Positions 26,570 to 53,210 of a stretch of 64,000 nt of DNA are shown here, one piece after another. The DNA lies in the IMG/VR virus record IMGVR_UViG_3300033182_000674, positions 1 to 64,000 of that record. One strand, written 5' to 3'. How positions within the stretch are numbered: position 1 is the stretch's first letter; each line of letters opens with the position of its first letter. The notes under the pieces were generated by a model. It searched no databases and was not told where the DNA came from. It was given only the letters and a program-made list of their open reading frames with translations. The position numbers and the translations under genes were made by a program.

Positions 26570-26911
26570 TTAATAACCGCCTTTACGAGCAACGTATGGC
26601 AATCCTGCAATACGGTTACCCTGCTTTGATGGAGCACCTGGGAACAATTGGTACAAGTCTTTAGAACTTAACTTCTTATTCCAAATCTTACTCATACCTT
26701 TGTTAATAACACGTTCCATTGGTTGCTCATTGTGATCAAAGTACTGCTCACGCAAGTACTCAATCACATCAAAGTGTTCGGTTGTAAGTTCACTCATTGT
26801 GTCATCAGCTGCCGCCATTGCGTGTGCAACTTCTTCTGTCCAATCAGCGATATTAACCAAGTTACCATGCTCGTCAGTTTCGATGGTAACACCATTTACT
26901 TCTAATGCCAT
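26570..26911 (-). CDS. DsrC/TusE-family protein lacking both C-terminal cysteines
   Basis: IETDEHGNLVNIADWTEEVA..LT.EHFDVIEYLRE..LYQLFPGAPSKQGNRIAGLP; ends YVARKGGY with no Cys; AAGGAGG RBS. Confidence 0.85.
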   Translation of the reverse strand: MALEVNGVTIETDEHGNLVNIADWTEEVAHAMAAADDTMSELTTEHFDVIEYLREQYFDHNEQPMERVINKGMSKIWNKKLSSKDLYQLFPGAPSKQGNRIAGLPYVARKGGY

Positions 26912-26921
26912 GATAACCTCC

Positions 26922-27233
26922 TTAGATACAACCAGTCGGCTTTGGTAGTCCTGCAATCTTACAGCCTTGCTTACCAGGACCATATGGGAATAGTTCGTAC
27001 AAGTATTTGTTTGTACCATACTGTTTACCAAACTTCTTACCTACTGCTTTTGTTAATACACGAACTGCTGGAGCAATTTGAAACTCCTCATAGTATTCGC
27101 GTAGGAAGTTAATAATATCCCAGTGACGATCGGTTAATTCGATCTCTTCGTCTTTTGCTAGTTCTTCGGCAATTGCTGGAGTCCAGTCATTAATGTTTGC
27201 CAAGTAACCTTCTTCATCTACATCGTAACTCAT
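26922..27233 (-). CDS. dsrC: DsrC with both conserved cysteines (CX10C)
   Basis: DEEGYL..INDWTP.IA..LA..LYELFPYGPGKQGCKIAGLPKPTGCI. Confidence 0.92.
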   Translation of the reverse strand: MSYDVDEEGYLANINDWTPAIAEELAKDEEIELTDRHWDIINFLREYYEEFQIAPAVRVLTKAVGKKFGKQYGTNKYLYELFPYGPGKQGCKIAGLPKPTGCI

Positions 27234-27249
27234 TGTACATACCTCTTCA

Positions 27250-27333
27250 TTATTTGCCAATCTGTTTCTTCACGAATCGGATTGCTTTCGGAACGGGACA
27301 CTTGTCCCACCATAGTTGGAAGATTGTGTTCAT
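27250..27333 (-). CDS. Unannotated 27-aa peptide MNTIFQLWWDKCPVPKAIRFVKKQIGK
   Basis: Strong AAGGAG RBS; fills the tusA-dsrC spacer; below the ORF-track cutoff. Confidence 0.55.
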   Translation of the reverse strand: MNTIFQLWWDKCPVPKAIRFVKKQIGK

Positions 27334-27343
27334 TTCTTACTCC

Positions 27344-27571
27344 TTAAGTTTTTCTAATAGTAAATTTAAACTGGCCATTTAAATGCCCTGTGCTTTCAAG
27401 TACATCACCAGTTTGATTACAGAACGCTTCAAAATCCTTTACACTACCAGGATCTGTTGCGATAATTTCCAAGATCTGACCGCTTTCCATGCCTTTAAGA
27501 CTTTTCTTTGCGCGTAAGATAGGTAATGGACAATTTAGACCAGTGGCGTCTAATAATACTACATCTGCCAT
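27344..27571 (-). CDS. tusA: TusA sulfurtransferase
   Basis: LDATGLNCPLPILRAKKSL..GQILEIIATDPGSVKDF. Confidence 0.95.
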   Translation of the reverse strand: MADVVLLDATGLNCPLPILRAKKSLKGMESGQILEIIATDPGSVKDFEAFCNQTGDVLESTGHLNGQFKFTIRKT

Positions 27572-27587
27572 ATCTTATACTCCTATG

Positions 27588-27617
27588 GTAAAAAAAGGGG
27601 AGCCCAATTGCTCCCCC
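27588..27617 (-). terminator. Intrinsic terminator after the porin gene
   Basis: GGGGAGC/GCTCCCC stem with T-tract on minus strand. Confidence 0.8.
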
Positions 27618-27653
27618 CATTATTTTATTTATATAGAATTATATTATAAATTC

Positions 27654-28508
27654 TTAAAATACCATGCGCATACCAACAATAGTAGTTGGATCTGTTGCAT
27701 CGTTATCATCAGTGCTATAGTTTACATATGCAGCAGTTGACTTAGAGAAGTTATGTGCCAACTCAGCAATATAAGTTTGATCACCATTCTCTACATCTTC
27801 GATACCACCACGAAGAGTGTTATTGCCAAAATCAGTTGCAGCAACTGCAGTAACAGTTACAGTATCATCATTAGCAATTTCATAAGTAGCACCTACAGAT
27901 AATGCACCAACGTTAGTTGTAGCACCAAATTGCTTAGTTGTTGCTGAAGTAGCTTTGTCTTCAGTATATACACCAGAAACACCTACAGCACCAAAGTCGT
28001 GTGAGATAGCAACTTCATAAGAATCAATCTTATCTTCACCACCATTGTCTTGAACTGTAGCAATAGAAACATCACCAACAGAAATAGCAACTACTGAATC
28101 AGCACGAGTACCACCGTCTGCACCAAATGAAGCGCCTTCAAAGATGTCAACAGTTGAGCTAGTAACTTGCTTAGTTAGATTTGACATACGACCAGCCATA
28201 ACAGTAAAGTCTACCATATCCAATGCAACATATGCATCACGTGTAGCAGAAGAACCTTGGTCAGTATTTTCAGTATCAAGATCTAAAGAAATGTTAGCAG
28301 TAGCTGATGCGCCATTACCCAAATCTTCAGATACAGTAAAACCTACGTATGCATCATCTGCTGATGCGTCAGTGGCGCCATTGCTCATAGTGATTTGCTG
28401 ATCAAGCTGGCCATAAACAACTGCACCTGCTGCTTTTGCATCCTTCTCTGGTGCGCAAGCTGCGATTAATGTTGCTGCTACAGCAACTGCTAATAAAGAC
28501 TTTTTCAT
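27654..28508 (-). CDS. Gram-negative outer-membrane porin (Porin_4-like)
   Basis: Signal peptide; VYGQLD, GFTVSEDLGNG, RDAYVAL..TVMAGR, HNFSKSTAAYVNY; C-terminal Phe (GMRMVF). Confidence 0.88.
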   Translation of the reverse strand: MKKSLLAVAVAATLIAACAPEKDAKAAGAVVYGQLDQQITMSNGATDASADDAYVGFTVSEDLGNGASATANISLDLDTENTDQGSSATRDAYVALDMVDFTVMAGRMSNLTKQVTSSTVDIFEGASFGADGGTRADSVVAISVGDVSIATVQDNGGEDKIDSYEVAISHDFGAVGVSGVYTEDKATSATTKQFGATTNVGALSVGATYEIANDDTVTVTAVAATDFGNNTLRGGIEDVENGDQTYIAELAHNFSKSTAAYVNYSTDDNDATDPTTIVGMRMVF

Positions 28509-28537
28509 ATTAACTCCTTAAGTTTTTAAAAAAGAAA

Positions 28538-28586
28538 CTGTATCATAAAATATACAAATGACACAGCTGTATCATAAAATATACAG
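28538..28586. promoter_or_regulatory. Tandem duplicated dyad-symmetric site upstream of the porin
   Basis: CTGTATCATAAAATATACA at 28538-28556 and 28567-28585; second copy is CTGTAT-N8-ATACAG. Confidence 0.55.
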
Positions 28587-28680
28587 TATTATGTATATCT
28601 TTTTTTCCTAATATATTAGTATAATTACTAATATTCCTATTCAGATTTTTTATAATGGATAAAAATTTTTTATAGGATAT

Positions 28681-28704
28681 AAAAAACCCCTCATGAAGAG
28701 GGGC
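28681..28704 (-). terminator. Intrinsic terminator
   Basis: CCCCTC/GAGGGG stem with T-tract on minus strand. Confidence 0.75.
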
Positions 28705-28732
28705 TGGAATTTATAGCAGAATTGTATAAAGG

Positions 28733-29538: not shown

Positions 29539-29539
29539 A

Positions 29540-29986: not shown

Positions 29987-30025
29987 TTAAATTTCCTTTC
30001 TCGTTGGAATACATTACTATTTATA

Positions 30026-30837: not shown

Positions 30838-30841
30838 AATT

Positions 30842-30865: not shown

Positions 30866-30873
30866 TTAAAAAA

Positions 30874-33386: not shown

Positions 33387-33935
33387 TTATTCCTTATGTG
33401 TATACCAAATATTATCTGGTCCAATGTTATATCCTAAAATACTTATACCTGACAAATGAGTACTACCAAACTCTTCATCTATTGCCTTTTTAACTTCTGG
33501 CATATCAATATCATGTCCAGATACTAAACCACCTTTTTTAACTTTTGGATACCATGCATGAATATCCTTTTTAACTCCAGCATAACTATGATCAGCGTCA
33601 ATAAATACAAAGTCTAATGAATTATCTTCGATATCATTTGCTGCTAATGCTGTAAAATTTCTAACTATTTTTGCTCTAGGTTTATAATTGTCAGCAAACT
33701 CTAATAAATCTTTATACCAAGGTGCTGGCTCTTTTTCTAATAGTTTTTCTGTAGTAGTGATTCCTTCTGCTTTCCAAATTCTATCATTAAAGAATACATC
33801 TACGCCATATAGTGTTAAATTAGGACAATTTTCAATAAGATGTTTAAATGTTGGTCCACGTAATACACCAAGTTCAGCACCTATTTTATAATCATTATCT
33901 TTTATAATTTTCTCAAGCCATAATTTTCTATTCAC
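33387..33935 (-). CDS. Class I SAM methyltransferase (Methyltransf_24-like)
   Basis: GAELGVLRG, LYGVD, SLDFVFIDADHSY..VKKDI..W..KVKKGG.VSGHD. Confidence 0.88.
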   Translation of the reverse strand: MNRKLWLEKIIKDNDYKIGAELGVLRGPTFKHLIENCPNLTLYGVDVFFNDRIWKAEGITTTEKLLEKEPAPWYKDLLEFADNYKPRAKIVRNFTALAANDIEDNSLDFVFIDADHSYAGVKKDIHAWYPKVKKGGLVSGHDIDMPEVKKAIDEEFGSTHLSGISILGYNIGPDNIWYTHKE

Positions 33936-34594
33936 AATTTGCTCCTAATATATTCTTTACCTTTTGGTCCAGTCCAATGCACTGCTTTCTTCTTATTGCT
34001 GTCTTGACCATCTAATAATTGAATACGTAACCAATTATATTCGTTTGGTACATCATTAATATACATTAATCTTGTTAGAGGATTATTCATCATTGAGTGT
34101 AGAACCTCTTGATCTCCAACCTGTGGATTTTGTTCTACATTATAAGCCCATTGATGTAAAATCTGTGGTGAATCTTTAAAAGCCACAACTCCTGAATTAT
34201 GCCATGTCATACCACGACGTTTAGTCCAAGGCTTATCTTCCACCATTGCTAACTTATTATCTATACAATAATTAAAAACACCTGAGATATCATCCAATAC
34301 TTCGATATCAGTATCTATCCAACATGTATAATTAGCTTTTTTAGAAGCAGTAATCATTGACTTTGGTTTTTTAAACCAACCTTGTTCAGTTAAATGTGAT
34401 AGATCAATTACTTCTGATACTTTAGATTTTTCTAATTTATTTAATGCTTCTTTTGACATACCAAAGTTAGCAACAATCATTGGTGTATCATTATGTTTAA
34501 AATAACCATCTAAAAACCATTCTAGCATCCATTCAGTATTTGTATCGCATCCTGTTAAGAATACTTTATCATACGATGTCATAACCAGTTCCAC
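33932..34594 (-). CDS. GT-A glycosyltransferase (GT8/GT77-like)
   Basis: WFKKP, CWIDTD (DxD), HNSGVV, GDQEVL, YNWLR, HWTG.KGK. Confidence 0.75.
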   Translation of the reverse strand: MELVMTSYDKVFLTGCDTNTEWMLEWFLDGYFKHNDTPMIVANFGMSKEALNKLEKSKVSEVIDLSHLTEQGWFKKPKSMITASKKANYTCWIDTDIEVLDDISGVFNYCIDNKLAMVEDKPWTKRRGMTWHNSGVVAFKDSPQILHQWAYNVEQNPQVGDQEVLHSMMNNPLTRLMYINDVPNEYNWLRIQLLDGQDSNKKKAVHWTGPKGKEYIRSKL

Positions 34595-35219
34595 CTTTCC
34601 AATTGTGTTTTGCTAAACAACCTTCTTCTTTTTGAATTGTAGTAAATGTATCTCTAGCTTCTACTGCCCAAGGATAATATTCTTCAAGCCAAGGGAAATT
34701 ACTTGTATTTAGAAATACATCTGTTGGTCTAGCATCAGTCTTTGCTTTTTCAATAATAGCTTTTGCGCCTAATCTATTTAGCATATAAGCATGAGCACCA
34801 GGTAAATATGGTTTAGACGTTAAAGGATTAACACCAAACATATTAGGTGTATTATATTTACCATATGATGGGTGACCAAATGAAATAAGTTTATTATAAA
34901 CTACAATTTTTGGAATAGGTCCAACAAAATATGCATCATGCTCTAGTATAAGATAATCATCATTATCTTTTGCTGCCATTTCCCATAATGAATAATGAGA
35001 TAAAAATGCTGCAACACAATTTTCTAAACGAGAATACTTCTCATTGAATCCATCTACGGGAATTCCTTTTTCTTCTAATAGCTTTAATGGATTATCTGAT
35101 GGTGTAATAGCTTTAAATATTTGAACATCAATATCATAAGTCTTAGCTGTATCAATACATCTATTTGCAGCCTTCATAGATAATTCATTATCTTCTATAG
35201 CAATAACAAAAGCTTTCAT
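34569..35219 (-). CDS. Glycosyltransferase family 25
   Basis: FKAITP, AAFLSHYSLWE, LILEHDA, GAHAYML. Confidence 0.85.
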   Translation of the reverse strand: MKAFVIAIEDNELSMKAANRCIDTAKTYDIDVQIFKAITPSDNPLKLLEEKGIPVDGFNEKYSRLENCVAAFLSHYSLWEMAAKDNDDYLILEHDAYFVGPIPKIVVYNKLISFGHPSYGKYNTPNMFGVNPLTSKPYLPGAHAYMLNRLGAKAIIEKAKTDARPTDVFLNTSNFPWLEEYYPWAVEARDTFTTIQKEEGCLAKHNWKGGTGYDIV

Positions 35220-35228
35220 TTCAAAACC

Positions 35229-35924
35229 TCATTCGGTCGTGGTCGATTTTAATTTTTGTGTATCAGTGTAATATGTTTTAGTTACACCTAATTCACCTGG
35301 CATTAATTGTTTACACATTATAGCATCATTAGGCCATAACCCAAATTGATTAACCAACTCTATTAGATGCTTAGCTGCACTAGGTTTAATTATATATGCA
35401 GAGTTTCCAGCCAAACCTTGTGGTACGTTATCAGAATCTATTGATGGTACTGGTTGAAAATCATTATCTTTACTTTGAATTTTACTATCAAACAAATGAG
35501 CTTTACGAGTATTACCAATAGGATTGTTGATACCTATTATACCATATTTTGTATCAGTCGTGTTAAAATTTATTTTCTTTTTAAAAATTGCATCATGTTC
35601 TAATATAAGAATTGGCTCATCATCTTCAACACATTTCTTCCATAGATTATAATGACTCATAGCACAAGCAATTCTACTATCTGGATTCTTTGTAGGATAT
35701 GCTTTCTTTAGTAAGCCAGAAGCCATATCAAGCCCACCACCAGTCCAAGGATAATTCCATTTAACACCATTAATGGCCATATCTTTATTTACATTAATAG
35801 GTGTGATTGCATCAAATCTTTCAATTTGAAAATCATTACTAACTTTTTCAGAGCTTTCTACTAATTTAGAATAAGCAGACTCAGATAATTCGTTATCTTT
35901 TATTACTATACAATATGCTTTCAT
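35229..35924 (-). CDS. Glycosyltransferase family 25
   Basis: RFDAITP, IACAMSHYNLWKK, ILILEHDA, GNSAYIIKP.AAK.L, PND. Confidence 0.88.
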   Translation of the reverse strand: MKAYCIVIKDNELSESAYSKLVESSEKVSNDFQIERFDAITPINVNKDMAINGVKWNYPWTGGGLDMASGLLKKAYPTKNPDSRIACAMSHYNLWKKCVEDDEPILILEHDAIFKKKINFNTTDTKYGIIGINNPIGNTRKAHLFDSKIQSKDNDFQPVPSIDSDNVPQGLAGNSAYIIKPSAAKHLIELVNQFGLWPNDAIMCKQLMPGELGVTKTYYTDTQKLKSTTTE

Positions 35925-36598
35925 ATTTTCTTAGATGAAGAATTTAATTCTTTTTCCTTTATATATTTTACTGGAGATGGATGAATATAATACAAAGAGA
36001 ATAATTCATCGTCAAACAATAAATCGTTTTGTGTCCAGCCGTTTGTTTTACACCAATCAACAATAATTTTACACGCTTCTGGTGTTAGAATATACCCAGT
36101 ACCGCCTGCAAAATATTTTTTACCGTGAGGATGTACATAAAACACTTTATGTAATCCATCACCATTTATATTTAATTGTGTTGTATTCTTTAAATTATTA
36201 TAATGCTTTAAGGCAATAAGCATACTATCAGTTGTTAATTGTATACCTAATGGAGTATTCATATTAAAATTATTTGGAATATTTAAATCACCACAACAAA
36301 CTGTATCATGTTCAACAATAGCAATAGGTTCATTTAATTCTATACATTTTACCCATAATTCATAATGTGAATAGAAACAAGCTTTCTTTGTTAATGCTAA
36401 TTTTTGATTACTATATTTTTTAGTTAATTCACCAGTCTTAATATTATACTTTTTATCGTAATCATTTAATATTGAAGGATAACATCCATCATGTAATTGT
36501 GGTTCCCATCCTTTATATTTTAAAAAGGTATCATAAGATTCTTTGGCAATCTTTTCAGATTGATCATATATTGAATTATATACTATAAATGTTTTCAT
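35921..36598 (-). CDS. Glycosyltransferase family 25
   Basis: ACFYSHYELW.KC...IAIVEHD, GTGYILTPEAC..I. Confidence 0.82.
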   Translation of the reverse strand: MKTFIVYNSIYDQSEKIAKESYDTFLKYKGWEPQLHDGCYPSILNDYDKKYNIKTGELTKKYSNQKLALTKKACFYSHYELWVKCIELNEPIAIVEHDTVCCGDLNIPNNFNMNTPLGIQLTTDSMLIALKHYNNLKNTTQLNINGDGLHKVFYVHPHGKKYFAGGTGYILTPEACKIIVDWCKTNGWTQNDLLFDDELFSLYYIHPSPVKYIKEKELNSSSKKI

Positions 36599-36600
36599 AA

Positions 36601-37263
36601 TTAAAAATCGTAATTAAATGCTTCAATATCTCTTTTATACAAATTAGCAATTAAATCTTTACTCTCGGTTGAAAATAATTCTTTATAAGCTTTATTATTA
36701 TTTTTAGACGGATTAGTCCTTTTGTCAAAAGACTTGTCTTTAAAAAATGGTATTTGTTGCATATCATCTTTTAAATTTTCAATTTTACAAATTTTGTCGA
36801 ATATTGATACATCTTTTATCCATGTCATTTGATCATGTGCTAAGCTAAACCAAGTATTATTCCAAGGGAGGTTAACATTAATGTGTAACCATTCATTAAA
36901 ATCTTTTTCCATTAAATTAAGTTCATTTAATAAAATAGTATCTGGTACTCTTTTAAACTTTCTAATTCGACTAGTTGTTTTTTTATATAATGAATTTGCT
37001 AATATTTCTTTTCTAAAAAAATACCAACTGCATACTCTATCCCAAGGATTTCTAACAACAGTAAACTTATAATATGAATTAAAATCAGGAATTTGTTTTT
37101 GACACATATCAATTGTAGAATGATAATTACCATCTGTTGTTTTATTATTAGTTACTTCATAGATATCTTTATTAATTCTGCCCATTGCAACTCTAACTGA
37201 TTTACCAGCAGTTTTAGGAATATGAACAAAGAGTAATTTTTCTTTTGGTGAATATACACTCAT
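36601..37263 (-). CDS. Sulfotransferase family 2
   Basis: FVHIPKTAGKS (5'-PAPS loop), FTVVRNPWDRVCSWY, YKRDIEAFNYDF. Confidence 0.9.
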   Translation of the reverse strand: MSVYSPKEKLLFVHIPKTAGKSVRVAMGRINKDIYEVTNNKTTDGNYHSTIDMCQKQIPDFNSYYKFTVVRNPWDRVCSWYFFRKEILANSLYKKTTSRIRKFKRVPDTILLNELNLMEKDFNEWLHINVNLPWNNTWFSLAHDQMTWIKDVSIFDKICKIENLKDDMQQIPFFKDKSFDKRTNPSKNNNKAYKELFSTESKDLIANLYKRDIEAFNYDF

Positions 37264-37904
37264 TAAGTAATATCCTTAGTAAAAATAATATTATATTGAT
37301 TAGTATATTCTTCATCTCTAAAAGATGAAGTAAAACCTTGAGAATGTAAAAAGTCTATAATCTTATTATCTATAACCTGATCTTTCCAGAATTGTTTGCT
37401 TTCTACTTCTATCTTTATCAAAGATGTTTTTTCTAAAATTGATTTAGCACCAACTAATACTTCGTAGCCAACACCTTCAACGTCTATCCACATTGCAATA
37501 TTATTATATTCATTAGAAAACATATGATCGATTTTATCTACAGAAACTGTAACATGTTCATAATGAACATTACTTTCTGTTCTTTCAAGTATAGAATTAT
37601 TCTTTTTGGTTTTAGGCATGATTCTGCCATTATTAGTCAATTGAACATAAAATGTAGTTTTACCAACATAATCTGATATTGCTAAATTATTAAATTCAAT
37701 ATTAGAAGGAAGTGTATCTTTAAACATATCATAATTATAAGGATTAGCTTCGTATGCAATTACTCTACATTCAGGAACTAATTTTTTTACTTTACAACTT
37801 GTTTGTGCATTAAATGAACCAATTTCTAAAAATAAGTCAGGTTTAGTATCAGAAATTAAAGAATAAAATTTCTGATCTAACTCATTTACATCTAATGTTT
37901 TCAT
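37263..37904 (-). CDS. FkbM-family methyltransferase
   Basis: FLEIGSFNA, IAYEANP, NLAISD, MWIDVEG.GYEVL.GA. Confidence 0.88.
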   Translation of the reverse strand: MKTLDVNELDQKFYSLISDTKPDLFLEIGSFNAQTSCKVKKLVPECRVIAYEANPYNYDMFKDTLPSNIEFNNLAISDYVGKTTFYVQLTNNGRIMPKTKKNNSILERTESNVHYEHVTVSVDKIDHMFSNEYNNIAMWIDVEGVGYEVLVGAKSILEKTSLIKIEVESKQFWKDQVIDNKIIDFLHSQGFTSSFRDEEYTNQYNIIFTKDIT

Positions 37905-38686
37905 AATATAACCTTTTTTAATTGTTCTATGTTATTACCACGATCTAGTAGTTTATCTCTTAAGAAGAAATGAACAAAGTATGCTTCCTTAATCTTATCA
38001 TCAATAACACCTTTATACAAAGCATTCCATTTCCAATCCATGTTTTTTACTTTCATCTTTTCTCTCTTAACCCATGTATTTAAAAGAGTCTGATCTGTAG
38101 ACCATTTCCACGCACCGATGCCATCAACAAAATCTTTAAATTCTGGACGGCGAATAAATTGTTCTGGCGTATCACCTCTTAGGTAAGTATCTATACTTTT
38201 ATTAAAGACCATTAATCCCATATTAAAGAATTCAGCACCAAGACTATTCCACTTCCAATCAACATCTTTTAATGAATCATATTGCATTCTAGAATAATTA
38301 ATAATCTTTCTTTTATAGTCTTCAGTTAATGGCATTTCACGTTCTACAACTCCGCCAAAATCGTAACTCGAATCCAAATCATCAAAAATATTAGGTGCTG
38401 TATCACGTATATAGATGTCAGCGTCCACAATAGAAATTTGATCGTATTGCCCCAAATAACCAAAAGCATTTTCTTTTTCATAGATTGGCAAAAAGCCTCC
38501 ATGTTTTTCATAAGACTCTTTACTACGATTAGTAGCAAATACATCAGGCTTAATTGCAAGAATAGGATGTCGTTGTACAATATGATCTATATCGTATTTC
38601 TTACAATACGCTGCAACTGATTCTACACAAAAATCATATAGTTTATTTCGTTGGCCAACATAGACCTGATAGATTAATCGTTTCAC
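37901..38686 (-). CDS. GT-A glycosyltransferase (GT8-like)
   Basis: IVDADIYI (DxD), FFNMGLMV, TDQTLLN, KWNAL, FVHFF. Confidence 0.8.
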   Translation of the reverse strand: MKRLIYQVYVGQRNKLYDFCVESVAAYCKKYDIDHIVQRHPILAIKPDVFATNRSKESYEKHGGFLPIYEKENAFGYLGQYDQISIVDADIYIRDTAPNIFDDLDSSYDFGGVVEREMPLTEDYKRKIINYSRMQYDSLKDVDWKWNSLGAEFFNMGLMVFNKSIDTYLRGDTPEQFIRRPEFKDFVDGIGAWKWSTDQTLLNTWVKREKMKVKNMDWKWNALYKGVIDDKIKEAYFVHFFLRDKLLDRGNNIEQLKKVIL

Positions 38687-40984: not shown

Positions 40985-40996
40985 TTCTTTTATTCC

Positions 40997-42451: not shown

Positions 42452-42461
42452 TTTTTATTTC

Positions 42462-43556
42462 CTATACCGTTATGATACTGCCTTCTGTTATGTTTGACCA
42501 TGTAGGATTACCATTTGTTTGATTTGATCTCAATGTCGCAAAGGTTACCCAATTTGCTGCATCATAAGTACCGTTTAAATTTCCAGTGTAATATTGTAAT
42601 AATGTTTCTTGTGGGCATCTATTAGGTCGTGCACCAATAAATGTTCTCAAATTTAATGAACCACCTTCCATTGCAGTGTATTCAATTGGATCATGTAAAT
42701 ACCATGCGATCCAATGTCCTGTTCCAGATGACCAAGATGTTCTTGCACCATTAAACATATTACCAGGACCAGCATCCCAACCACCATTATACGTTGTTTG
42801 TGTAAATGGATCACTGGCGTTTGAAGTATATATGCCATATTTTCCAGGAACTGGTATTTGCCCATATGTTGCGGACATAGCAGTTCCAGATGTTCCTGAC
42901 GTTGATAATCTAGTACCATCGCCTAAATAAATTCCTCCAGCATTATCAATATCCCAGAGATAATAACTTGGACCAACACTAGCATATAATCTCCACAATT
43001 GGAAAGTATTTGGCGCCCAACCTAATGTAAAGTTTGAACTTGCTGTTGCTGTATTTACTCCATCAGATGCTTTAAATGTAATATCAAATGAACCACCACT
43101 TGAATCATATCCAGCATCTAAAATATTTTGTAATGACTTTGGTGCAATTATAAACGTTCCATTTGAATCATTTGTAACTGTAACAAAATCATCACCTGAA
43201 TCCATTTCGTAAGTCCAATTTAAGACTTGCTCTTCTGGATCAGTTGCGATCAAATTAATTGTTGTTGAAGCAACAGAATCTAATACATACGCTGCTTCAG
43301 GTAATCCTGCAGAATCCCATATTGGAGATTCATTTACTAATGATATATTGTACCAACCTTGTCCATTCCAAAGATATAATCTATTTGTAGAAGCAACATA
43401 GGCTGTATCACCAGTATCATTACCACTTAATGGTAAATCATTTGGCGTTGCATAATCTTCAGTACCTAATGGTACTTCATCGGAAATAGCAGTTTGAACA
43501 ATCTTACCATTATCTCCAATTATTAAACCAAGATTAAAAGACTTTGAAACGGCCAT
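42462..43556 (-). CDS. Array B paralog 2: N-module plus unrelated C-terminal domain (possibly discoidin-like)
   Basis: N-module, then NMFNG..SW..WIAWY..PNRCP..LQY..NWV pattern. Confidence 0.72.
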   Translation of the reverse strand: MAVSKSFNLGLIIGDNGKIVQTAISDEVPLGTEDYATPNDLPLSGNDTGDTAYVASTNRLYLWNGQGWYNISLVNESPIWDSAGLPEAAYVLDSVASTTINLIATDPEEQVLNWTYEMDSGDDFVTVTNDSNGTFIIAPKSLQNILDAGYDSSGGSFDITFKASDGVNTATASSNFTLGWAPNTFQLWRLYASVGPSYYLWDIDNAGGIYLGDGTRLSTSGTSGTAMSATYGQIPVPGKYGIYTSNASDPFTQTTYNGGWDAGPGNMFNGARTSWSSGTGHWIAWYLHDPIEYTAMEGGSLNLRTFIGARPNRCPQETLLQYYTGNLNGTYDAANWVTFATLRSNQTNGNPTWSNITEGSIITV

Positions 43557-43559
43557 ATA

Positions 43560-44714
43560 TTAATCCATTGTTAATGTATCAATATAATCATTAGCATCCA
43601 TCATACGAACAGATGGTGTAGTGCCAGATCTTCTATTACAGCTAGCACCAATGTATGTTACACCACTAACTGTACCATCACCAATTTTAACCCAGTTATT
43701 ACTAGTATGACTAGATTGTCTATACCACCAACGTGATACGCCATTTGCAACTCTTACAGCAAACCACCAATCAGTACAAGTAGAACCTTGATATGCATTA
43801 TATGTAGTGTCAATACCAGTAAAACCAAAGCCATTCGAATCAGTATCATTACTTAATCGACTAACACCTTCAACAACTTGATTACTTGCGTTGTATAAGT
43901 ACATACCACCACCACCTCTATTACTGAAGCTGGTCGCATAACCAGAGAAATAATATACTGCTAAGTATTCATCACCTAATTCCATTGTCCTTGGTTGAAC
44001 ATGCATACCATCAAACATTTTGGTTGTACTTGTAAGAGTCCATGTCCCAGTGTTAGCATCGTATGAATCAGTCCATGTACCACCATCACTATACGCATCT
44101 AATAAAACACGAGTTGAATTAGCCCAAGCATCTCCTTGAGTATCTAAGTTAACTGCAACACCATTGGAAAAGGTAATTGTAAATTCTGATACAGCACCAA
44201 TGATATTAATACCATCAGTCGCTCTAAATGTTACAGCAGCAGTACCACCTGCAGAATCATATCCAGCTGCTAGAATATCTTCAAGTGTTTTCGCAGTAAT
44301 TGTAAACTCATCATTGTTTTGAGAAATTGTAAATAGATCTGCAGCAGAATCAGCTGCTTCATATGTCCATTGTATAGGTAAACCTTCTGGATCAGATGCA
44401 GCCAATTGAATTACAATAGGTGTTCCACTATTTGAATCCAGTTCATATGCAGCTTGAGGTTGGCCATTGGAGTCCCATATTGGACTTTCATTAATTAAAG
44501 CAATATTATACCAGCCAGCTCCAGTCCAGACATAAAGACGATTTGTTTCAGCGACATAAGCTTGATCACCAACTTGATTACCAGTAGATGGTAATTGCGT
44601 GGCTGTACTATAGTCTTCGGTTCCTAGTGGAATATCTTCAGACAAAGCTTGTGTTGATATCTTGTTATCTTGTCCAAGAATTAAGCCTAAATTAAAAGAC
44701 TTAGATACAGCCAT
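43560..44714 (-). CDS. Array B paralog 1: N-module plus unrelated beta-sandwich-like C-terminus
   Basis: N-module, then Trp/Tyr-rich strands (WWFAVRV..VSRWWYR..WVKIG). Confidence 0.72.
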   Translation of the reverse strand: MAVSKSFNLGLILGQDNKISTQALSEDIPLGTEDYSTATQLPSTGNQVGDQAYVAETNRLYVWTGAGWYNIALINESPIWDSNGQPQAAYELDSNSGTPIVIQLAASDPEGLPIQWTYEAADSAADLFTISQNNDEFTITAKTLEDILAAGYDSAGGTAAVTFRATDGINIIGAVSEFTITFSNGVAVNLDTQGDAWANSTRVLLDAYSDGGTWTDSYDANTGTWTLTSTTKMFDGMHVQPRTMELGDEYLAVYYFSGYATSFSNRGGGGMYLYNASNQVVEGVSRLSNDTDSNGFGFTGIDTTYNAYQGSTCTDWWFAVRVANGVSRWWYRQSSHTSNNWVKIGDGTVSGVTYIGASCNRRSGTTPSVRMMDANDYIDTLTMD

Positions 44715-45819: not shown

Positions 45820-47151
45820 TCATTTAAACCTATCAGGCCCATGAATCCATATAACAAGTGTCCATCTTTCACCTTTTGTTACAGGATGTACTTTGTGTAA
45901 ACAGAATGATGGGAAGGTTGTAATTGCACCACGTTCCATAATTGCATCAACAAGATTACCATTATTATTCACTTCAAGTTTACCACCTTCATATGATGAA
46001 GGATCTGATAATTGAATAACAACAGATAATTTACGAGTAGCAGATTGACCAGCTCCAGCATCAATATGCCAGTCATAATGACCACCTTCTTTATAATGTA
46101 ATAGCTGAAGACTATGAGTAATACCTAATAGATCAAACTTATAAAGCTCTTTATTTAGATGCTCTGCCGCAGCAGCAATCTTAGTATAAATCCATTTATA
46201 TTTCTCTTCTAAAGGAATATTATAAACATCTACTGTTCTTGTTTCAGCAGCATATGTACCTTCGTAATCACCAGCTCCAACAGTACCTTTGACTTCATAA
46301 AGATCATCTTTAGATTCAATAATCGATTGGCATTCTTCTGGTGTTAACATTGCTGATGGCATATTATGAGAACCTAGAGTGGCAATTCCTGGGAAAGTAT
46401 CATCACATCGGCGTATCATAATACCGTCTTCAATAATATTTTTATTCATACCAAAATCAAATGGTTCACGTTCTTGCTCTTCAGGTTGAGGTGCACGCTC
46501 TGGAAAATCTTCCATTTGTGGTATTTCACGCGGTGGAATAACAAATGTTGGTCGTTTAATTTCTTGTACATTAGGAGTAGTTTCTCCTTTAATACGAACT
46601 AAATCACCAGCATGACCAGCATTCTGACCTTCTGCATCTACAAAATGAAAGAATACTTGTGTTTGCCATTTTCCTTTATATGTTGTACGCCAATGTGGTA
46701 ATTCTTCACCACGATACATAACCATATCACCAACATCAATTTGAACTTGTTCACCAATTCTATCATCCATATCTTTACCAAAATAAATTGGCCAAATACG
46801 AGATTCTTCTGCGTGTCCAAGAGTTAATGTACCAGAAATTTCGCATGCTGGTCGATCAGTATGCCATTCTAATGTTTCACCTGGTTTATAAATTCTAGAG
46901 TAACAATAAGCAGGCAAAAGCTTTATACCCAATTGATCGGATAATGGTTCTGCAAGATTGTTTAGAATTTGTTTTAAATAGACATCATTATAAATGCTTT
47001 CAGATAAAGGACACTGATCGTCTTGTTCAAGTTTACCTTCTTTAGAAAGTTCAAATAAATGGTTGGTCAAATCAGAACATGCTTGTTTATCAAGAACACC
47101 ACTAAGATATACCCAACCTTTATCTTTAAAGGCATCTGCCACTGGATTCAT
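45820..47151 (-). CDS. Tandem two-domain 2OG-Fe(II) oxygenase
   Basis: Domain 1 WHTDRPACEISGTL..HWR..VFFHF; domain 2 YDWHID..RKLSVVIQLSDP..GGKL..HKV.PVTKGER.TLV.W. Confidence 0.88.
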   Translation of the reverse strand: MNPVADAFKDKGWVYLSGVLDKQACSDLTNHLFELSKEGKLEQDDQCPLSESIYNDVYLKQILNNLAEPLSDQLGIKLLPAYCYSRIYKPGETLEWHTDRPACEISGTLTLGHAEESRIWPIYFGKDMDDRIGEQVQIDVGDMVMYRGEELPHWRTTYKGKWQTQVFFHFVDAEGQNAGHAGDLVRIKGETTPNVQEIKRPTFVIPPREIPQMEDFPERAPQPEEQEREPFDFGMNKNIIEDGIMIRRCDDTFPGIATLGSHNMPSAMLTPEECQSIIESKDDLYEVKGTVGAGDYEGTYAAETRTVDVYNIPLEEKYKWIYTKIAAAAEHLNKELYKFDLLGITHSLQLLHYKEGGHYDWHIDAGAGQSATRKLSVVIQLSDPSSYEGGKLEVNNNGNLVDAIMERGAITTFPSFCLHKVHPVTKGERWTLVIWIHGPDRFK

Positions 47152-49835: not shown

Positions 49836-49845
49836 GGTATAAATT

Positions 49846-50220: not shown

Positions 50221-50222
50221 AT

Positions 50223-50627: not shown

Positions 50628-50641
50628 ACCTGGAGCGATAT

Positions 50642-51091
50642 ATGGCAAAGGATCTCGGCGACGAATTAGAAAACATCGAAGAAGGTGTTGAAAATTTAAA
50701 GAACAAAGAATTCGAACTATTTGGTATTAAAATGACACCTATGACGATTGGTGCTGCTTTTGCTGCGCTATCAACAGTTGTTGGTGCATTATATGGTGGA
50801 TTTGTTATGTACCAAAAAGTTGAAGAGATTGCTAGCTTAGATCTAGGTTCATATGAACAACAAATGGTTGAAACCAGCAACCAAATAGAAATTCAAGGTA
50901 AATTGTTAGAATCTATTGAACAGAATCTACGTGATACTAAACAATTAACTTATGATATTGAAAAACGTGTCAACGACAAAGTCGTATATTTTGAAAATAA
51001 AATGGATAAATTTGAAAATAAAGTGGAAAACACGAAAACAGAATTAGAAGAAAAACTTCAAAAAGCTTTAGATAATCCATTGGCTAATTAA
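50642..51091 (+). CDS. Single-pass membrane protein with long coiled coil
   Basis: TM IGAAFAALSTVVGALYGGFVMY; heptad region; ends ALDNPLAN. Confidence 0.7.
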   Translation: MAKDLGDELENIEEGVENLKNKEFELFGIKMTPMTIGAAFAALSTVVGALYGGFVMYQKVEEIASLDLGSYEQQMVETSNQIEIQGKLLESIEQNLRDTKQLTYDIEKRVNDKVVYFENKMDKFENKVENTKTELEEKLQKALDNPLAN

Positions 51092-51104
51092 GGAGACACA
51101 ACTG

Positions 51105-51461
51105 ATGGTAGCAAAAGATGTATTAGATGAAATTGATATCGATGGTGATGGTTCAATTTCAGAACAAGAGATGCAAATCTATCTTGAAGCAAAACGCAGG
51201 GAGATGGAAGATGAAGATGCTAAAAGAGATCAACAACGTAAAATGGTTTGGTTCGCTCTTTTTGGTATGTTGCTTTATCCTTTGTTTGTATTTGGAACTG
51301 AAGCTTTGGGCTTCACTAATGCTTCTGGAGTAATTGGTGATATGGCACCAACTTATTTCATGTCTGTATCATTAGTAGTTGGCGCATTCTTTGGTGCTGA
51401 TGCTTATGTAAAAGGCAAAGACAAAAAAGGTGATAAGAATGATAAAAAAGATAAGAAATAA
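51105..51461 (+). CDS. Two-TM holin-like protein with an EF-hand-like loop
   Basis: DIDGDGSISEQE loop; two TM segments; basic C-terminal tail. Confidence 0.6.
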   Translation: MVAKDVLDEIDIDGDGSISEQEMQIYLEAKRREMEDEDAKRDQQRKMVWFALFGMLLYPLFVFGTEALGFTNASGVIGDMAPTYFMSVSLVVGAFFGADAYVKGKDKKGDKNDKKDKK

Positions 51462-51465
51462 AATT

Positions 51466-51837
51466 ATGTTGGTTGCATTAATCGCTAGTGCTTCTATAGC
51501 ACTAGCACAACCAGACATTCCTGAAATTCCACAGCCACAGCCTGAAAATCATAAGGGTATGGCATTGCCAATGATCCTTAGATGTTTTGATTATCCAGCT
51601 GATGAAGGCTTAAAGAATAGTTTTGGTGAGCTACCATTTGTTGAAGGCAATGGTGATATTGAGTTTACTAATTCTAAAGGATCTGTTCCTATTAAGATGA
51701 AGTTGTATGTTAATCCAGATACTCGCTCATGGACAACTGTATTCATCTTAAGTCCTACACTTAATTGTGTTGCTAGTGGTGGTGGTGCTGATTCATTTGG
51801 GCCAGCGAATGTAGCTGAAGAAGGAATCAGAATGTGA
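51466..51837 (+). CDS. Secreted hypothetical protein
   Basis: Signal MLVALIASASIALA-QPD; LYVNPDTRSWT...C motif. Confidence 0.6.
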   Translation: MLVALIASASIALAQPDIPEIPQPQPENHKGMALPMILRCFDYPADEGLKNSFGELPFVEGNGDIEFTNSKGSVPIKMKLYVNPDTRSWTTVFILSPTLNCVASGGGADSFGPANVAEEGIRM

Positions 51838-52747
51838 AATGGGTATTAATCTATATTACGCTACAAGGTGACTTTGGTAAAATGGCATCTTACGGTGAAT
51901 ATGATACAATGGACGGGTGCTTCGATGCTCGTGATAAATTAATCGAAGTGGTGGGTCGACCGATAGTAAACTATCAAGCTATTTGTGTAATAAAAGATGA
52001 GGAGCACTTTTAATGAGTGCAACAGAATTCGAAACTTTATCTCCTGAATTAAAAAAATTACAGTTAGATATGTTAGAAGGACATTGGTGCATCATAGCAT
52101 ATAATCCGTGGTATATTACATTGCGCAATCATACCACTGGTGAATTAAAGCAAGAAAGATATAGAGATTAACACCAACAACTATTTGGTTTACAGTCTTC
52201 TATTTTCTTTTTTCCAACACACATGTTATATACTGTTATTTTTAGATTTTGAGCATCAGTGGCAAAATCAACGCCACCACATTTAATATAGAGATTAATA
52301 CACTCTTTAAAACCTTTCATTGTTTCAAATTGTATAACCATTATAGATTATGCTCTTGAACAATTTCTCTAAGTTGACGTGCTATTTTATTATATTTGTA
52401 TTCCCAATTTTGTGATACTGCTAATTGATTTTCATACAAAGCTTTATAATCTACTTTCTTTGGAAAGAACTTATTAAATAAATTTTTAAACCACTCAATC
52501 ATTTCCAGTCATCCTCTGATAATCTTTGCTTTAACATATAATTCTCAGCCTCAAGGTGTCTGATTCTATTCAATAATTTCTTAGGATCAAGATTTTCAGT
52601 AGAATCAGAACCTTTTTGGCGAGAAGTTTCTTTTATTGCTTCACAATATTTTAGCATGTCTTTCGACATTATTCAGATATCCATTGAATAATAATCGATG
52701 TCATAAGACCTATAACGAAGCCAATACCAATATTAACAATATCCATT

Positions 52748-52903
52748 TTATAACTCCTCAAGTTCTCGAATAGTTTTCTTTAAGTTGCGTTTGATGATCT
52801 CTTTTGCAACTTCTTTCTTTTGTCCTTTTTGTTTACGGAGTGTTTCCCAAAGGTACGCAATCTTAGCAATCAGACCATTTACTTTTCCAAATACAAAAGG
52901 CAT
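52748..52903 (-). CDS. Small basic protein downstream of the TusE-like gene
   Basis: AAGGAG RBS before MPFVFG; Lys-rich. Confidence 0.5.
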   Translation of the reverse strand: MPFVFGKVNGLIAKIAYLWETLRKQKGQKKEVAKEIIKRNLKKTIRELEEL

Positions 52904-52913
52904 AATATTCTCC

Positions 52914-53210
52914 TTACACACACCCTGTTGGCTTTGGAAGACCACCATACTTAGCAATTTGTTTCATTGGTCCAGACTTCCAAATATCATAAAGTGCTTT
53001 TGCTTTACGATCCATACCAAGTGCTTTACCAAAGTCGCGTACACGAGGTACCATACCATCGTTTTCATACATCTCACGTGCTAAATTAATATGTTCTACC
53101 ATTTCTGGTTTTAAAACTACACCATCGGCGATTGCCATTTCATTCATTACTTCTGGAGTCCAATCATTCATATTGATTAAGAAACCATCACCATCACGTT
53201 CTAAACTCAT
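52914..53210 (-). CDS. tusE: DsrC/TusE-family protein with only the C-terminal cysteine
   Basis: ERDGDGFLINMNDWTPEV..MA..LYDIWKSGPMKQIAKYGGLPKPTGCV. Confidence 0.85.
   Translation of the reverse strand: MSLERDGDGFLINMNDWTPEVMNEMAIADGVVLKPEMVEHINLAREMYENDGMVPRVRDFGKALGMDRKAKALYDIWKSGPMKQIAKYGGLPKPTGCV

What the first reader, a model, noticed from the sequence alone, without database searches (positions are those of the whole stretch)
26570..53210. Phage sulfur-relay set: TusA plus three DsrC-family proteins covering all three cysteine states
One operon reads tusA, 27-aa peptide, dsrC (CX10C), then a Cys-less dsrC-like gene. A third paralog at 52914 has only the terminal Cys (TusE-type). In Allochromatium vinosum, TusA and DsrC relay sulfur to reverse DsrAB, and TusA/TusE also serve tRNA 2-thiolation. 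Single dsrC or tusE genes are known in SUP05 phages; three differently armed paralogs with tusA suggest a relay plus a catalytically dead regulator or decoy (inference). No dsrAB or dsrEFH is present in this window. Several phage tRNAs have U34 anticodons, but a role in modifying them is untested.
Basis: partly seen in the sequence, partly recalled or inferred. Interest (0 to 1): 0.75.

Follow-up and report, generated by a model that had tools for sequence, protein, structure and literature searches.

The report
Phage sulfur-carrier gene set (TusA, three DsrC)
A 220-kb T4-like marine phage carries four small sulfur-carrier genes that mirror the set found in sulfur-oxidising bacteria; one is a cysteine-free DsrC relative that in bacteria sits beside the sulfite-reductase genes, and this is a fuller example of a known kind of phage metabolic hijacking.

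Summary
One minus-strand operon lies between two terminators. It reads tusA (27571..27344), a 27-codon ORF, dsrC with CX10C (27233..26922), a Cys-free dsrC-like gene (26911..26570) and a 45-codon ORF. A third DsrC-family gene with only the penultimate Cys lies at 53210..52914.

The record is a complete 219.7-kb T4-like myovirus. It has no dsrAB, dsrEFH, rhodanese, nifU, iscA or mnmA.

- **DsrC1** groups with the DsrC of gammaproteobacterial dsr operons (71-79% identity).
- **TusA** is 68-71% identical to the TusA of the rhd-tusA-dsrE2 locus.
- **The Cys-free gene is not phage decay.** It belongs to a very conserved bacterial family with an invariant tail (RIAGLPY[VI]ARKGGY), found in at least 110 sulfur-oxidiser species. 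In 68 of 80 loci a Cas6-like gene lies within 2.5 kb. dsrA lies within 6 kb in 46 of 60 loci with enough flank, mostly on the opposite strand.
- **The single-Cys gene** belongs to a 98-aa clade widespread in marine T4-like phages, where it sits next to iscA.

Host-like genomes hold the same three types. Related phage contigs carry all of them plus rhd, dsrA, nifU and iscA in one block.

Phage dsrC, tusE-like and tusA genes are already published. This is a new member of a known kind, with two less-described details: the orthology of the Cys-free paralog, and a conserved CPxPK micro-ORF.

The parts
27595..27618 (-). Terminator-like hairpin plus T-run between the porin gene and tusA; upstream boundary of the operon
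   Evidence: 9 pairs, 6 GC, T-run; sequence
27626..27633 (-). TATAAATA, an exact match to the T4 late-promoter consensus, 55 nt before the tusA start (role inferred)
   Evidence: 14 of 16 copies in the window lie on the coding strand, several just upstream of gene starts; the total count is not above chance
27344..27571 (-). tusA, 75 aa, with the active-site motif CPLP
   Evidence: Pfam TusA 76.9 bits. 68-71% identical to the tusA of the rhd-tusA-dsrE2 locus in sulfur-oxidiser genomes. Matches E. coli TusA structures 1DCJ/3LVJ.
27250..27333 (-). 27-aa micro-ORF MNTIFQLWWDKCPVPKAIRFVKKQIGK with a Shine-Dalgarno site; function unknown
   Evidence: The same small ORF, with core W-x-[DE]-[KN]-C-P-[VA]-P-K-x-x-R-[FW]-V-K, lies directly 5' of dsrC in L144 (93% identity), L008-L011 and L141/L145. 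It is absent in L109 and L112.
26922..27233 (-). dsrC1, a bona fide DsrC with CysB and CysA (CX10C)
   Evidence: Pfam DsrC 150.9 bits. E=7e-52 to A. vinosum DsrC 1YX3. All 120 best homologues have CX10C. Nested in the clade of dsr-operon DsrC. dN/dS 0.06-0.14.
26570..26911 (-). dsrC2, a Cys-free DsrC-fold protein with an arm two residues longer, ending KGGY
   Evidence: Orthologues found in 110 genome stretches; the 80 loci kept are all gammaproteobacterial sulfur oxidisers. Linked to dsrAB. AF2 model has the DsrC fold, TM 0.69. dN/dS 0.02-0.08 among phages.
26427..26564 (-). 45-aa ORF, last gene of the operon, function unknown
   Evidence: Conserved after dsrC2 in L109 (80%) and after dsrC in L144 (71%); dN/dS 0.19. 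No Pfam match.
26409..26428 (-). Terminator-like hairpin; downstream boundary of the operon
52914..53210 (-). dsrC3, a 98-aa DsrC-family protein with only the penultimate Cys and lacking the 5-7 residue insert of DsrC
   Evidence: Clade of 27 rows with 100/100 support, holding ocean T4-like phage genes and a bacterial sister group. Next to iscA, phoH, gp59 and gp32 in L148/L149.
27654..28508 (-). Phage-encoded Gram-negative porin, immediately upstream of the operon (context only)
   Evidence: Pfam Porin_4 E=2.3e-14. A porin also follows dsrC2 in L008.
25355..26302 (-). pstS-like phosphate-binding protein, immediately downstream (context only)
   Evidence: Pfam PBP_like_2 E=4.9e-44; 91% identical in L144

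Best explanation
The window is the auxiliary-gene region of a complete ~220-kb T4-like myovirus. Its host is most likely a gammaproteobacterium that oxidises stored sulfur through the reverse Dsr pathway.

The phage has gathered small, non-enzymatic sulfur-trafficking genes into one late-type operon. These are TusA, the substrate carrier DsrC and a Cys-free DsrC-fold protein. In bacteria these genes sit at separate places.

During infection, extra TusA and DsrC would raise the pool of stoichiometric carriers. That pool feeds persulfide sulfur along the route host Rhd/TusA, then DsrE2/DsrEFH, then DsrC, into the host's own rDsrAB. This would keep sulfur oxidation and energy supply running for phage replication.

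The Cys-free protein cannot carry sulfur on a thiol. It keeps an invariant, lengthened C-terminal arm, so it most likely works by binding a partner. Candidates are rDsrAB, DsrEFH/DsrMK, or the dsr promoter. It would do the same job as its host orthologue beside dsrAB.

The third gene (dsrC3) has a different history. It is a long-resident gene of marine T4-like phages that usually sits beside iscA. It probably passes persulfide sulfur for Fe-S or thio-cofactor needs, or draws it from DsrEFH.

Shown here: gene identities, orthology, synteny and purifying selection. Inferred: every transfer step, the binding role and the timing of expression.
For: **Phage identity**
- Portal, tail sheath, gp15-like protein, T4-type DNA polymerase, gp46-like protein, RNR, gp32 and RNase H.
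- CheckV estimates 100% completeness.

**DsrC1**
- CX10C tail. E=7e-52 to A. vinosum DsrC.
- Lies inside the clade of dsr-operon DsrC.

**TusA**
- 68-71% identical to the bacterial tusA that lies between a rhodanese and a dsrE2-like gene.

**Cys-free family**
- 83% mean identity and an invariant tail.
- Found in 110 genome stretches; the 80 loci kept are all gammaproteobacterial sulfur oxidisers.
- Cas6-like neighbour within 2.5 kb in 68 of 80 loci. dsrA within 6 kb in 46 of 60 loci.
- DsrC fold with a disordered arm.

**Match to hosts and relatives**
- Host-like genomes G001, G002 and G004 have exactly these three DsrC types.
- Relatives L112-L115 carry dsrC3-type, rhd, dsrA, tusA, dsrC, dsrC2, nifU and iscA contiguously. 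L109 carries tusA-dsrC-dsrC2-orf45.

**Selection and arrangement**
- dN/dS is 0.02-0.14 for all three DsrC genes among phages, lowest for the Cys-free one.
- In bacteria dsrC and the Cys-free gene lie ~7 kb apart, mostly on opposite strands, and tusA lies 31 kb or more away. The phage adjacency is therefore a new arrangement.

**Published background**
- Phage dsrC, tusE-like and tusA genes (PMC8190135, PMC4164917, 10.1101/053090).
- DsrEFH-to-DsrC sulfur transfer (PMC3397948).
Against: - No biochemical or expression data. No RNA run holds this DNA.
- The host is not identified. The five host-like genomes give only 53-58% identity for PstS and no porin match. Their GC is 47-60% against 34.5% for the phage.
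- This phage lacks the dsrA, rhd, nifU and iscA of its relatives. The set may therefore be a reduced remnant rather than an optimised relay.
- dsrC2 is dispensable in at least one close relative (L144). Assembly joints in two metagenomes hint at the same, weakly.
- The function of the Cys-free family is unknown even in bacteria.
- dsrC3 lies 26 kb away and may have nothing to do with the operon.
Confidence: 0.6

Rival explanations
1. The set serves tRNA 2-thiouridine synthesis (the TusA to TusE to MnmA route), for host or phage tRNAs.
For: - dsrC3 has the TusE cysteine pattern.
- Host-like genomes have MnmA, and their only candidate TusE is the 98-aa type.
- Kieft et al. favour a TusE role for single-Cys phage copies (PMC8190135).
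Against: - No phage tRNA is Lys, Glu or Gln. The phage has no mnmA.
- All three DsrC genes score far below NCBIfam's TusE equivalog cut-off: 43.6-119 bits against 191.
- E. coli TusE falls outside the clade of DsrC plus the 98-aa type, with 99/95 support.
- DsrC1 keeps CysB. TusA is the rhd-tusA-dsrE2 type.
- Relatives place the genes next to dsrA.
- Host-like genomes have no TusBCD apart from DsrEFH.
Confidence: 0.08
2. The carriers mainly supply sulfur for Fe-S cluster or thio-cofactor assembly needed by phage or host enzymes during infection, not for energy metabolism.
For: - In relatives the block ends in nifU-iscA.
- In ocean T4-like phages the 98-aa gene sits directly after iscA.
- Kieft et al. 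list NifU, IscA, GrxD and TusA as shared neighbours (PMC8190135).
Against: - This genome has no nifU or iscA.
- DsrC1 and the Cys-free gene are orthologues of dsr-locus genes.
- Relatives carry dsrA itself, 87% identical to a Chromatiaceae DsrA.
- This reading may hold for dsrC3 alone.
Confidence: 0.17
3. The Cys-free protein is a decoy or plug that blocks host DsrAB or DsrEFH and so shuts down or redirects sulfur oxidation.
For: - It has the DsrC fold with a retained AGLP arm but no thiol.
- It is co-transcribed with dsrC1.
Against: - The same protein is conserved beside dsrAB in more than 100 sulfur-oxidiser species, with dN/dS around 0.05. It is a normal host component, not an anti-host invention.
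- Encoding a bona fide DsrC and TusA together with an inhibitor in one operon is hard to reconcile.
[quoted passage not shown] It could be this orthologue by gene numbering, which is a lead only.
Confidence: 0.1
4. The genes are hitch-hiking or decaying cargo without function in the phage.
For: - Content is variable among relatives: dsrC2 is absent in L144, tusA is absent in L008, and dsrA is absent here.
Against: - All frames are intact, with Shine-Dalgarno sites and terminators.
- dN/dS is 0.02-0.14 at dS 0.4-1.3 among phage copies.
- Phage copies form their own well-supported subclades in all three families.
Confidence: 0.03

Closest known systems
rdsrA/rdsrC auxiliary genes of SUP05 phages (Anantharaman et al. 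2014, cited from PMC4164917; Roux et al. 2014, PMC4164917)
   Same: - T4-like and other marine phages of sulfur-oxidising Gammaproteobacteria carrying dsrC-like genes, 2OG-Fe(II) oxygenases and tctA.
- The viral 'dsrC_1' type lacks CysB and a 7-8 residue insert, as dsrC3 does here.
- Lau and Guaymas contigs L141/L145 share the tusA, micro-ORF, dsrC order.
   Different: This genome has no dsrA. It adds a Cys-free paralog. By the runs that hold it, it comes from coastal, estuarine and seawater samples.
The 191 'sulfur phages' of Kieft et al. 2021 (PMC8190135)
   Same: - dsrC/tusE-like carriers dominate.
- Cysteine states were tallied: 23 with both, 112 with the second only, 5 with neither.
- One to four such genes per contig.
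- TusA, NifU and IscA are frequent neighbours.
   Different: - That study treats the copies that lack cysteines as probable TusE or as non-validated.
- Here the Cys-free copy is shown to be the orthologue of a dsrAB-linked bacterial family, and the three copies are matched to three host orthologue groups.
- The record's length does not occur in their supplementary tables.
Cytoplasmic sulfur relay of Allochromatium vinosum: Rhd, TusA, DsrE2, DsrEFH, DsrC, rDsrAB (PMC3397948 for DsrEFH to DsrC; the other steps from my own knowledge of Stockdreher et al. 2014)
   Same: Phage TusA and DsrC1 are close homologues of these carriers and keep the active cysteines.
   Different: The phage supplies only the carriers and none of the enzymes or DsrEFH. 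It adds a protein without cysteines, whose role is not part of the published relay.
E. coli TusA-TusBCD-TusE-MnmA tRNA thiolation relay
   Same: The same protein folds, and dsrC3 has the same single-Cys pattern.
   Different: - No orthology is shown: E. coli TusE falls outside the clade, and scores are below the equivalog cut-offs.
- The phage has no TusBCD, MnmA or substrate tRNAs.

Membership tests
DsrC (substrate carrier of dissimilatory sulfite reductase) | DsrC/TusE/DsvC fold (PF04358, TIGR03342) | tested here: met
   All three genes score over the cut-offs. The AF2 model of dsrC2 matches only DsrC structures.
DsrC (substrate carrier of dissimilatory sulfite reductase) | Penultimate CysA and CysB ten residues upstream on the C-terminal arm | tested here: met
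   Met for dsrC1 only (GCKIAGLPKPTGCI). dsrC3 has CysA only. dsrC2 has neither: Asn replaces CysB and Gly replaces CysA.
DsrC (substrate carrier of dissimilatory sulfite reductase) | Orthology with the dsrC of dsrABEFHC operons | tested here: met
   dsrC1 is nested in that clade and is 71-79% identical to the operon copies. dsrC2 and dsrC3 fall in other clades.
DsrC (substrate carrier of dissimilatory sulfite reductase) | Accepts sulfur from DsrEFH and delivers it to DsrAB | not testable with these tools
   Needs persulfide-transfer assays or complex modelling.
TusE (tRNA 2-thiouridine relay) | Single conserved Cys with CysB replaced | tested here: met
   dsrC3 has Ala at the CysB column and Cys at the CysA column.
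TusE (tRNA 2-thiouridine relay) | Equivalog-level similarity or phylogenetic grouping with E. coli TusE | tested here: not met
   NF008562 gives 43.6 bits against a cut-off of 191. E. coli TusE lies outside the clade of DsrC plus the 98-aa type, with 99/95 support, though on a long branch.
TusE (tRNA 2-thiouridine relay) | Partners TusBCD and MnmA, and substrate tRNAs Lys, Glu and Gln | tested here: not met
   None is present in the phage. Host-like genomes have MnmA but only the dsr-operon DsrH/TusB. The interaction itself is not testable.
TusA (sulfur carrier) | TusA fold with an active Cys in the CPxP motif | tested here: met
   PF01206 gives 76.9 bits. The motif reads LNCPLP and aligns to the active site of E. 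coli TusA.
TusA (sulfur carrier) | Orthology with the dissimilatory rhd-tusA-dsrE2 TusA rather than E. coli TusA | tested here: met
   68-71% identical to the tusA flanked by a rhodanese and a dsrE2-like gene. It scores below NCBIfam's E. coli-type equivalog cut-off, 54 bits against 78.
RspA-type (Cys-free, presumed regulatory DsrC relatives; named in PMC8477390) | Lacks both cysteines | tested here: met
   dsrC2 has no Cys.
RspA-type (Cys-free, presumed regulatory DsrC relatives; named in PMC8477390) | Sequence membership in the RspA group as originally defined, and DNA binding | not tested
   No RspA reference sequence or definition was available in the library. DNA binding needs an experiment.

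The most novel reading that the evidence does not exclude
The Cys-free DsrC-fold protein, with its invariant arm ...NRIAGLPY[VI]ARKGGY, may be an unrecognised working part of the reverse-Dsr system of gammaproteobacterial sulfur oxidisers. In bacteria it is encoded with a Cas6/Cmx6-like protein, a TPR-like protein, a 62-aa protein and a TauD-like oxygenase, mostly on the strand opposite dsrAB.

Phages pick out just this one gene and place it behind tusA and dsrC. That suggests it directly tunes DsrAB/DsrC turnover or dsr expression. The conserved CPxPK micro-protein encoded between tusA and dsrC could be a further small player in the relay.

A more remote idea is that the -GGY end is trimmed to a Gly-Gly terminus that carries sulfur as a thiocarboxylate. 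Nothing here tests that.
Probability: 0.25. Interest if true: 0.7.

Novelty: new member of a known kind. Interest (0 to 1): 0.42.

Why it matters
Phage-borne sulfur carriers are thought to speed up sulfur oxidation in oceans and estuaries. The many copies that lack cysteines have so far been set aside as 'TusE-like' or non-functional.

Three points from this work sharpen what should be tested:
- A complete phage genome carries one representative of each of the host's three DsrC-type proteins, plus the dissimilatory TusA.
- The Cys-free one is the most strongly conserved of the three.
- In bacteria that gene is tied to dsrAB.

The result points to a specific, cheap experiment: does the Cys-free protein bind rDsrAB, DsrEFH or the dsr promoter? 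That experiment would also explain a conserved but unstudied bacterial gene cluster.

Tried and rejected
- **Known phages.** Megablast of 20 kb against GenBank phages found only a 40-base tRNA-Met match to Acinetobacter phages. No named relative exists.
- **IMG/VR, single protein.** The scan with dsrC2 found nothing. With the alignment it found one other contig, L092. That contig is a different element with a helicase, a ParB-methylase and GmrSD.
- **RNA evidence.** No RNA run holds the DNA. The runs offered were found only through a related protein, in salt-marsh and sediment samples. Expression could not be checked.
- **Assembly joints.** Logan contigs of four DNA runs show relatives at 85-99% identity. 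They also show joints that skip dsrC2 and orf45, but the joint sides are only 24-29 bases long, so this is weak.
- **Host.** The five host-like genomes give no porin match and only 53-58% identity for PstS. A low-GC bacterial contig (L110, 35% GC) holds an 84%-identical dsrC2 away from dsrAB.
- **Micro-ORF in metagenomes.** The metagenome-wide pattern scan gave one hit, which showed no match to any cassette protein.
- **Micro-ORF as a tusA remnant.** I considered that the 27-aa ORF is a leftover of a second tusA, because its CPVPK...R..KK resembles the TusA active-site loop and helix. Pfam gives no hit, and the ORF is conserved as a small gene, so a remnant is unlikely.
- **ESM Atlas.** The 238-aa neighbour gave only TPR-like structural hints.
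- **Literature.** Searches for a described Cys-free dsr-linked DsrC, for RspA and for a Cas6-dsrAB link found nothing specific.

Full report
**1. What is there**

The minus strand between two terminator-like hairpins (27618-27595 and 26428-26409) carries five tightly spaced ORFs, each with a Shine-Dalgarno site.
- tusA, 27571..27344: 75 aa, LNCPLP motif, Pfam TusA E=1e-21.
- A 27-aa ORF, 27333..27250.
- dsrC1, 27233..26922: 103 aa counted from the ATG, tail GCKIAGLPKPTGCI, Pfam DsrC E=1.9e-44.
- dsrC2, 26911..26570: 113 aa, no cysteine, tail RIAGLPYVARKGGY, E=4.6e-30.
- A 45-aa ORF, 26564..26427.

A porin gene lies just upstream and a pstS-like gene just downstream. A third DsrC-family gene, dsrC3 (53210..52914, 98 aa, tail KYGGLPKPTGCV, E=6.1e-23), lies 26 kb away among small unknown ORFs.

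**2. The genome**

The window is the first 64 kb of a 219,676-bp IMG/VR virus record that CheckV rates 100% complete. It is a T4-like myovirus.
- It has a portal, tail sheath, sheath stabiliser, baseplate and long-fibre proteins, a T4-type DNA polymerase, a gp46-like nuclease, a helicase and RNR.
- The window holds gp32, RNase H and a denV-like gene.

The whole genome has exactly three DsrC-family genes and one TusA. It has no dsrAB, no DsrE-family gene and no mnmA. tblastn with phage versions finds no rhodanese, dsrA, nifU or iscA.

Its six tRNAs are Pro, Gly, Thr, Leu, Met and Arg. None is Lys, Glu or Gln, the only bacterial substrates of 2-thiolation at U34 by established knowledge. Near-identical DNA occurs in marine, estuary, aquaculture and seawater metagenomes.

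**3. Three old families, not three recent paralogs**

Searches of 5.8 billion proteins gave three separate homologue sets.
- All 120 best DsrC1 hits have CX10C.
- 119 of 120 DsrC2 hits have no Cys in the tail, and the commonest tails all end in ARKGGY.
- 118 of 120 DsrC3 hits have only the penultimate Cys.

A maximum-likelihood tree of 80 sequences has three starred clades.
- DsrC1 and its phage relatives form a 100/99 subclade inside the gammaproteobacterial dsr-operon DsrC.
- DsrC2 and its phage relatives form a 99/99 subclade inside the Cys-free clade (100/99).
- DsrC3 lies in a 100/100 clade of 98-aa proteins.
- E. coli TusE, taken from K-12, lies outside the clade of DsrC plus the 98-aa type (99/95), on a long branch.

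Five sulfur-oxidiser genomes reached through the loci each contain all three types, and three of the five contain only these three. The phage copies are 71-76%, 67-88% and 54-57% identical to them. The phage set therefore mirrors the host set one for one.

**4. The Cys-free family**

Sixteen members average 83% identity. 59 columns are invariant, including the whole arm LFPGAPSKQGNRIAGLPY[VI]ARKGGY.

Aligned with DsrC, Asn replaces CysB, Gly replaces CysA, and the arm is two residues longer. An AlphaFold model (pLDDT 71) has the DsrC fold, with TM 0.69 to 1SAU and 1YX3 and no other significant match. Its last residues are disordered.

A scan of one genome per species found 110 stretches encoding the family. 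The 80 loci kept are all gammaproteobacterial sulfur oxidisers. They include Sedimenticolaceae, Chromatiaceae, Thiotrichaceae, Ectothiorhodospiraceae, Solemya symbionts, Achromatium and Thiosymbion.

In these genomes the gene closes a conserved cluster:
- a TauD-like oxygenase;
- a 62-aa protein;
- a 238-aa TPR-like protein;
- a Cas6/Cmx6-like protein (PF09559, E=2.6e-59);
- the Cys-free DsrC.

The cluster lies upstream of dsrA, mostly on the opposite strand. The Cas6-like gene is within 2.5 kb in 68 of 80 loci. dsrA is within 6 kb in 46 of 60 loci with enough flank, on the opposite strand in 40 of them.

I found no paper describing this. The A. vinosum genome paper only lists four extra DsrC-family genes of unknown role (PMC3368242). 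The phage took only the DsrC-like gene, not its neighbours.

**5. TusA**

Phage TusA is 68-71% identical to one tusA in each of four of the host-like genomes; in the fifth a partial match reaches 80%. In the one copy whose neighbours were read (L103), it lies between a rhodanese and a dsrE2-like gene. That is the arrangement tied to sulfur oxidation in A. vinosum. It scores below NCBIfam's E. coli-type TusA equivalog cut-off.

**6. Relatives**

- Contigs L112-L115 carry dsrC3-type, rhd, dsrA, tusA, dsrC, dsrC2, nifU and iscA as one block.
- L109 has tusA-dsrC-dsrC2-orf45.
- The 106-kb contig L008 has a dsrC3-type gene, then 4 kb on the micro-ORF, dsrC, dsrC2, a porin, nifU and iscA, without tusA.
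- L144 is close to this phage (PstS 91%). It has tusA, the micro-ORF, dsrC, orf45 and pstS, without dsrC2.
- Lau and Guaymas plume contigs L141/L145 have two dsrA-like genes, nifU, iscA, tusA, the micro-ORF and dsrC.

The cassette is therefore modular. This genome holds a carrier-only version.

In bacteria dsrC and the Cys-free gene are about 7 kb apart, mostly on opposite strands, and tusA is 31 kb or more away. Their adjacency in phages is a phage arrangement.

**7. Selection**

Among phage copies dN/dS is as follows, at dS of 0.4-1.3:

| Gene | dN/dS |
|---|---|
| dsrC1 | 0.06-0.14 |
| dsrC2 | 0.02-0.08 |
| dsrC3 | 0.02-0.14 |
| orf45 | 0.19 |

The Cys-free gene is the most constrained.

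**8. dsrC3**

Its clade, apart from a five-member bacterial sister group, comes from T4-like ocean phage contigs. There the gene follows iscA and sits among phoH, gp59 and gp32. This matches the TusE-like DsrC-1 to DsrC-4 of Roux et al. (10.1101/053090) and the 'dsrC_1' of SUP05 viruses, which lacks CysB and a short insert (PMC4164917).

The bacterial counterparts sit in housekeeping contexts, for example next to ychF. The host-like genomes have MnmA but only one DsrH/TusB homologue, the one in the dsr operon. If the 98-aa type acts as TusE there, it must draw sulfur from DsrEFH or from TusA. Its role in the phage stays open.

**9. The small ORFs**

The 27-aa ORF recurs in four sequence versions, always immediately 5' of phage dsrC and always with a Shine-Dalgarno site. 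Its core is W-x-[DE]-[KN]-C-P-[VA]-P-K-x-x-R-[FW]-V-K. It is absent from the 80 bacterial loci and from L109 and L112. Its CPxP cysteine context recalls the TusA active site, but Pfam sees nothing. It is probably a real micro-gene of unknown role.

**10. Expression signals**

TATAAATA, the T4 late-promoter consensus, occurs 16 times in the window. That is not above chance, but 14 copies are on the coding strand and several sit just before gene starts. One lies 55 nt before tusA, and one lies upstream of the block that ends in dsrC3. Late expression is an inference only. No RNA data could be found.

**11. Reading**

The best-supported account is a host-derived carrier set that supports the host's reverse-Dsr sulfur oxidation during infection. 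An older phage-lineage single-Cys carrier sits elsewhere in the genome. Its 'dead regulator or decoy' needs rewording: the Cys-free protein is a conserved host component of unknown, probably binding, function.

The tRNA idea is weak. Phage dsrC, tusE-like and tusA genes, mixed cysteine states and several copies per contig are already published (PMC8190135). This is a new member of a known kind. The orthology of the Cys-free gene, its bacterial cluster and the micro-ORF are the parts worth following up.

Noticed in passing
L005:3085-6345, and L012-L091 around position 10001: In gammaproteobacterial sulfur oxidisers a conserved cluster lies upstream of dsrAB, mostly on the opposite strand. It reads TauD-like oxygenase, 62-aa protein, 238-aa TPR-like protein, Cas6/Cmx6-like protein (PF09559, E=2.6e-59) and Cys-free DsrC-like protein. 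A Cas6 homologue outside any CRISPR context next to dsr genes appears undescribed in the papers searched.
   Followed up: partly
window 27250-27333 (-); L144:7283-7363; L008:7657-7734; L141:8708-8800: A conserved 25-30 aa micro-ORF with the core WxDKCPxPKxxR[FW]VK and its own ribosome-binding site. It is always wedged directly before phage dsrC, and it is also present in Lau and Guaymas plume phage contigs.
   Followed up: partly
window 27654-28508 (-) and 25355-26302 (-): A phage-encoded Gram-negative porin and a PstS-like phosphate-binding protein flank the sulfur operon. A porin also follows dsrC2 in the related contig L008.
   Followed up: no
L144:5761-7583, and window 26428-26922: A close relative (PstS 91% identical) has tusA, the micro-ORF, dsrC, orf45 and pstS without the Cys-free gene. 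Metagenome contigs in two runs show joints that skip dsrC2 and orf45, though the joint sides are short and the evidence is weak. The Cys-free gene seems to be gained or lost among near relatives.
   Followed up: partly
L094:13691-14064 (genome 97691-98064, outside the window): ARAGORN calls a tmRNA gene (flagged with an asterisk) with tag peptide ANDDVYGGYALAA in the phage genome.
   Followed up: no
L141:4420-7060 and L145:3289-5929: Two tandem dsrA-like genes, each about 59% identical to the DsrA of L112, in hydrothermal-plume phage contigs, followed by nifU, two iscA-like genes, tusA, the micro-ORF and dsrC.
   Followed up: no
window 7158-13965 and 39566-44714: Two runs of large ORFs of 358-487 aa. 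Four of those tested match the same unknown phage family, phrog_19111, which suggests tandem paralog arrays.
   Followed up: no
window 33932-37904, 38683-39522 and 45820-47151: A run of six similar-sized ORFs (213-231 aa), one of which matches glycosyltransferase family 25. A sulfotransferase-family gene. A gene that fuses a ferrochelatase-like N-terminal part to a 2OG-Fe(II) oxygenase part.
   Followed up: no
L092:1-11813: The only other IMG/VR contig with a Cys-free DsrC-like gene (64% identical) is a different element. It carries a helicase, a PD-(D/E)XK nuclease, a ParB-methylase and a GmrSD-like nuclease. This suggests a second, independent capture of the gene.
   Followed up: partly
L110:7842-8183: A 35%-GC bacterial contig (cbb3 oxidase, Ppx-GppA, photolyase) encodes a Cys-free DsrC 84% identical to the phage's, but not beside dsrAB. 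Its GC content matches the phage's 34.5%, so it may be closer to the true host lineage.
   Followed up: no
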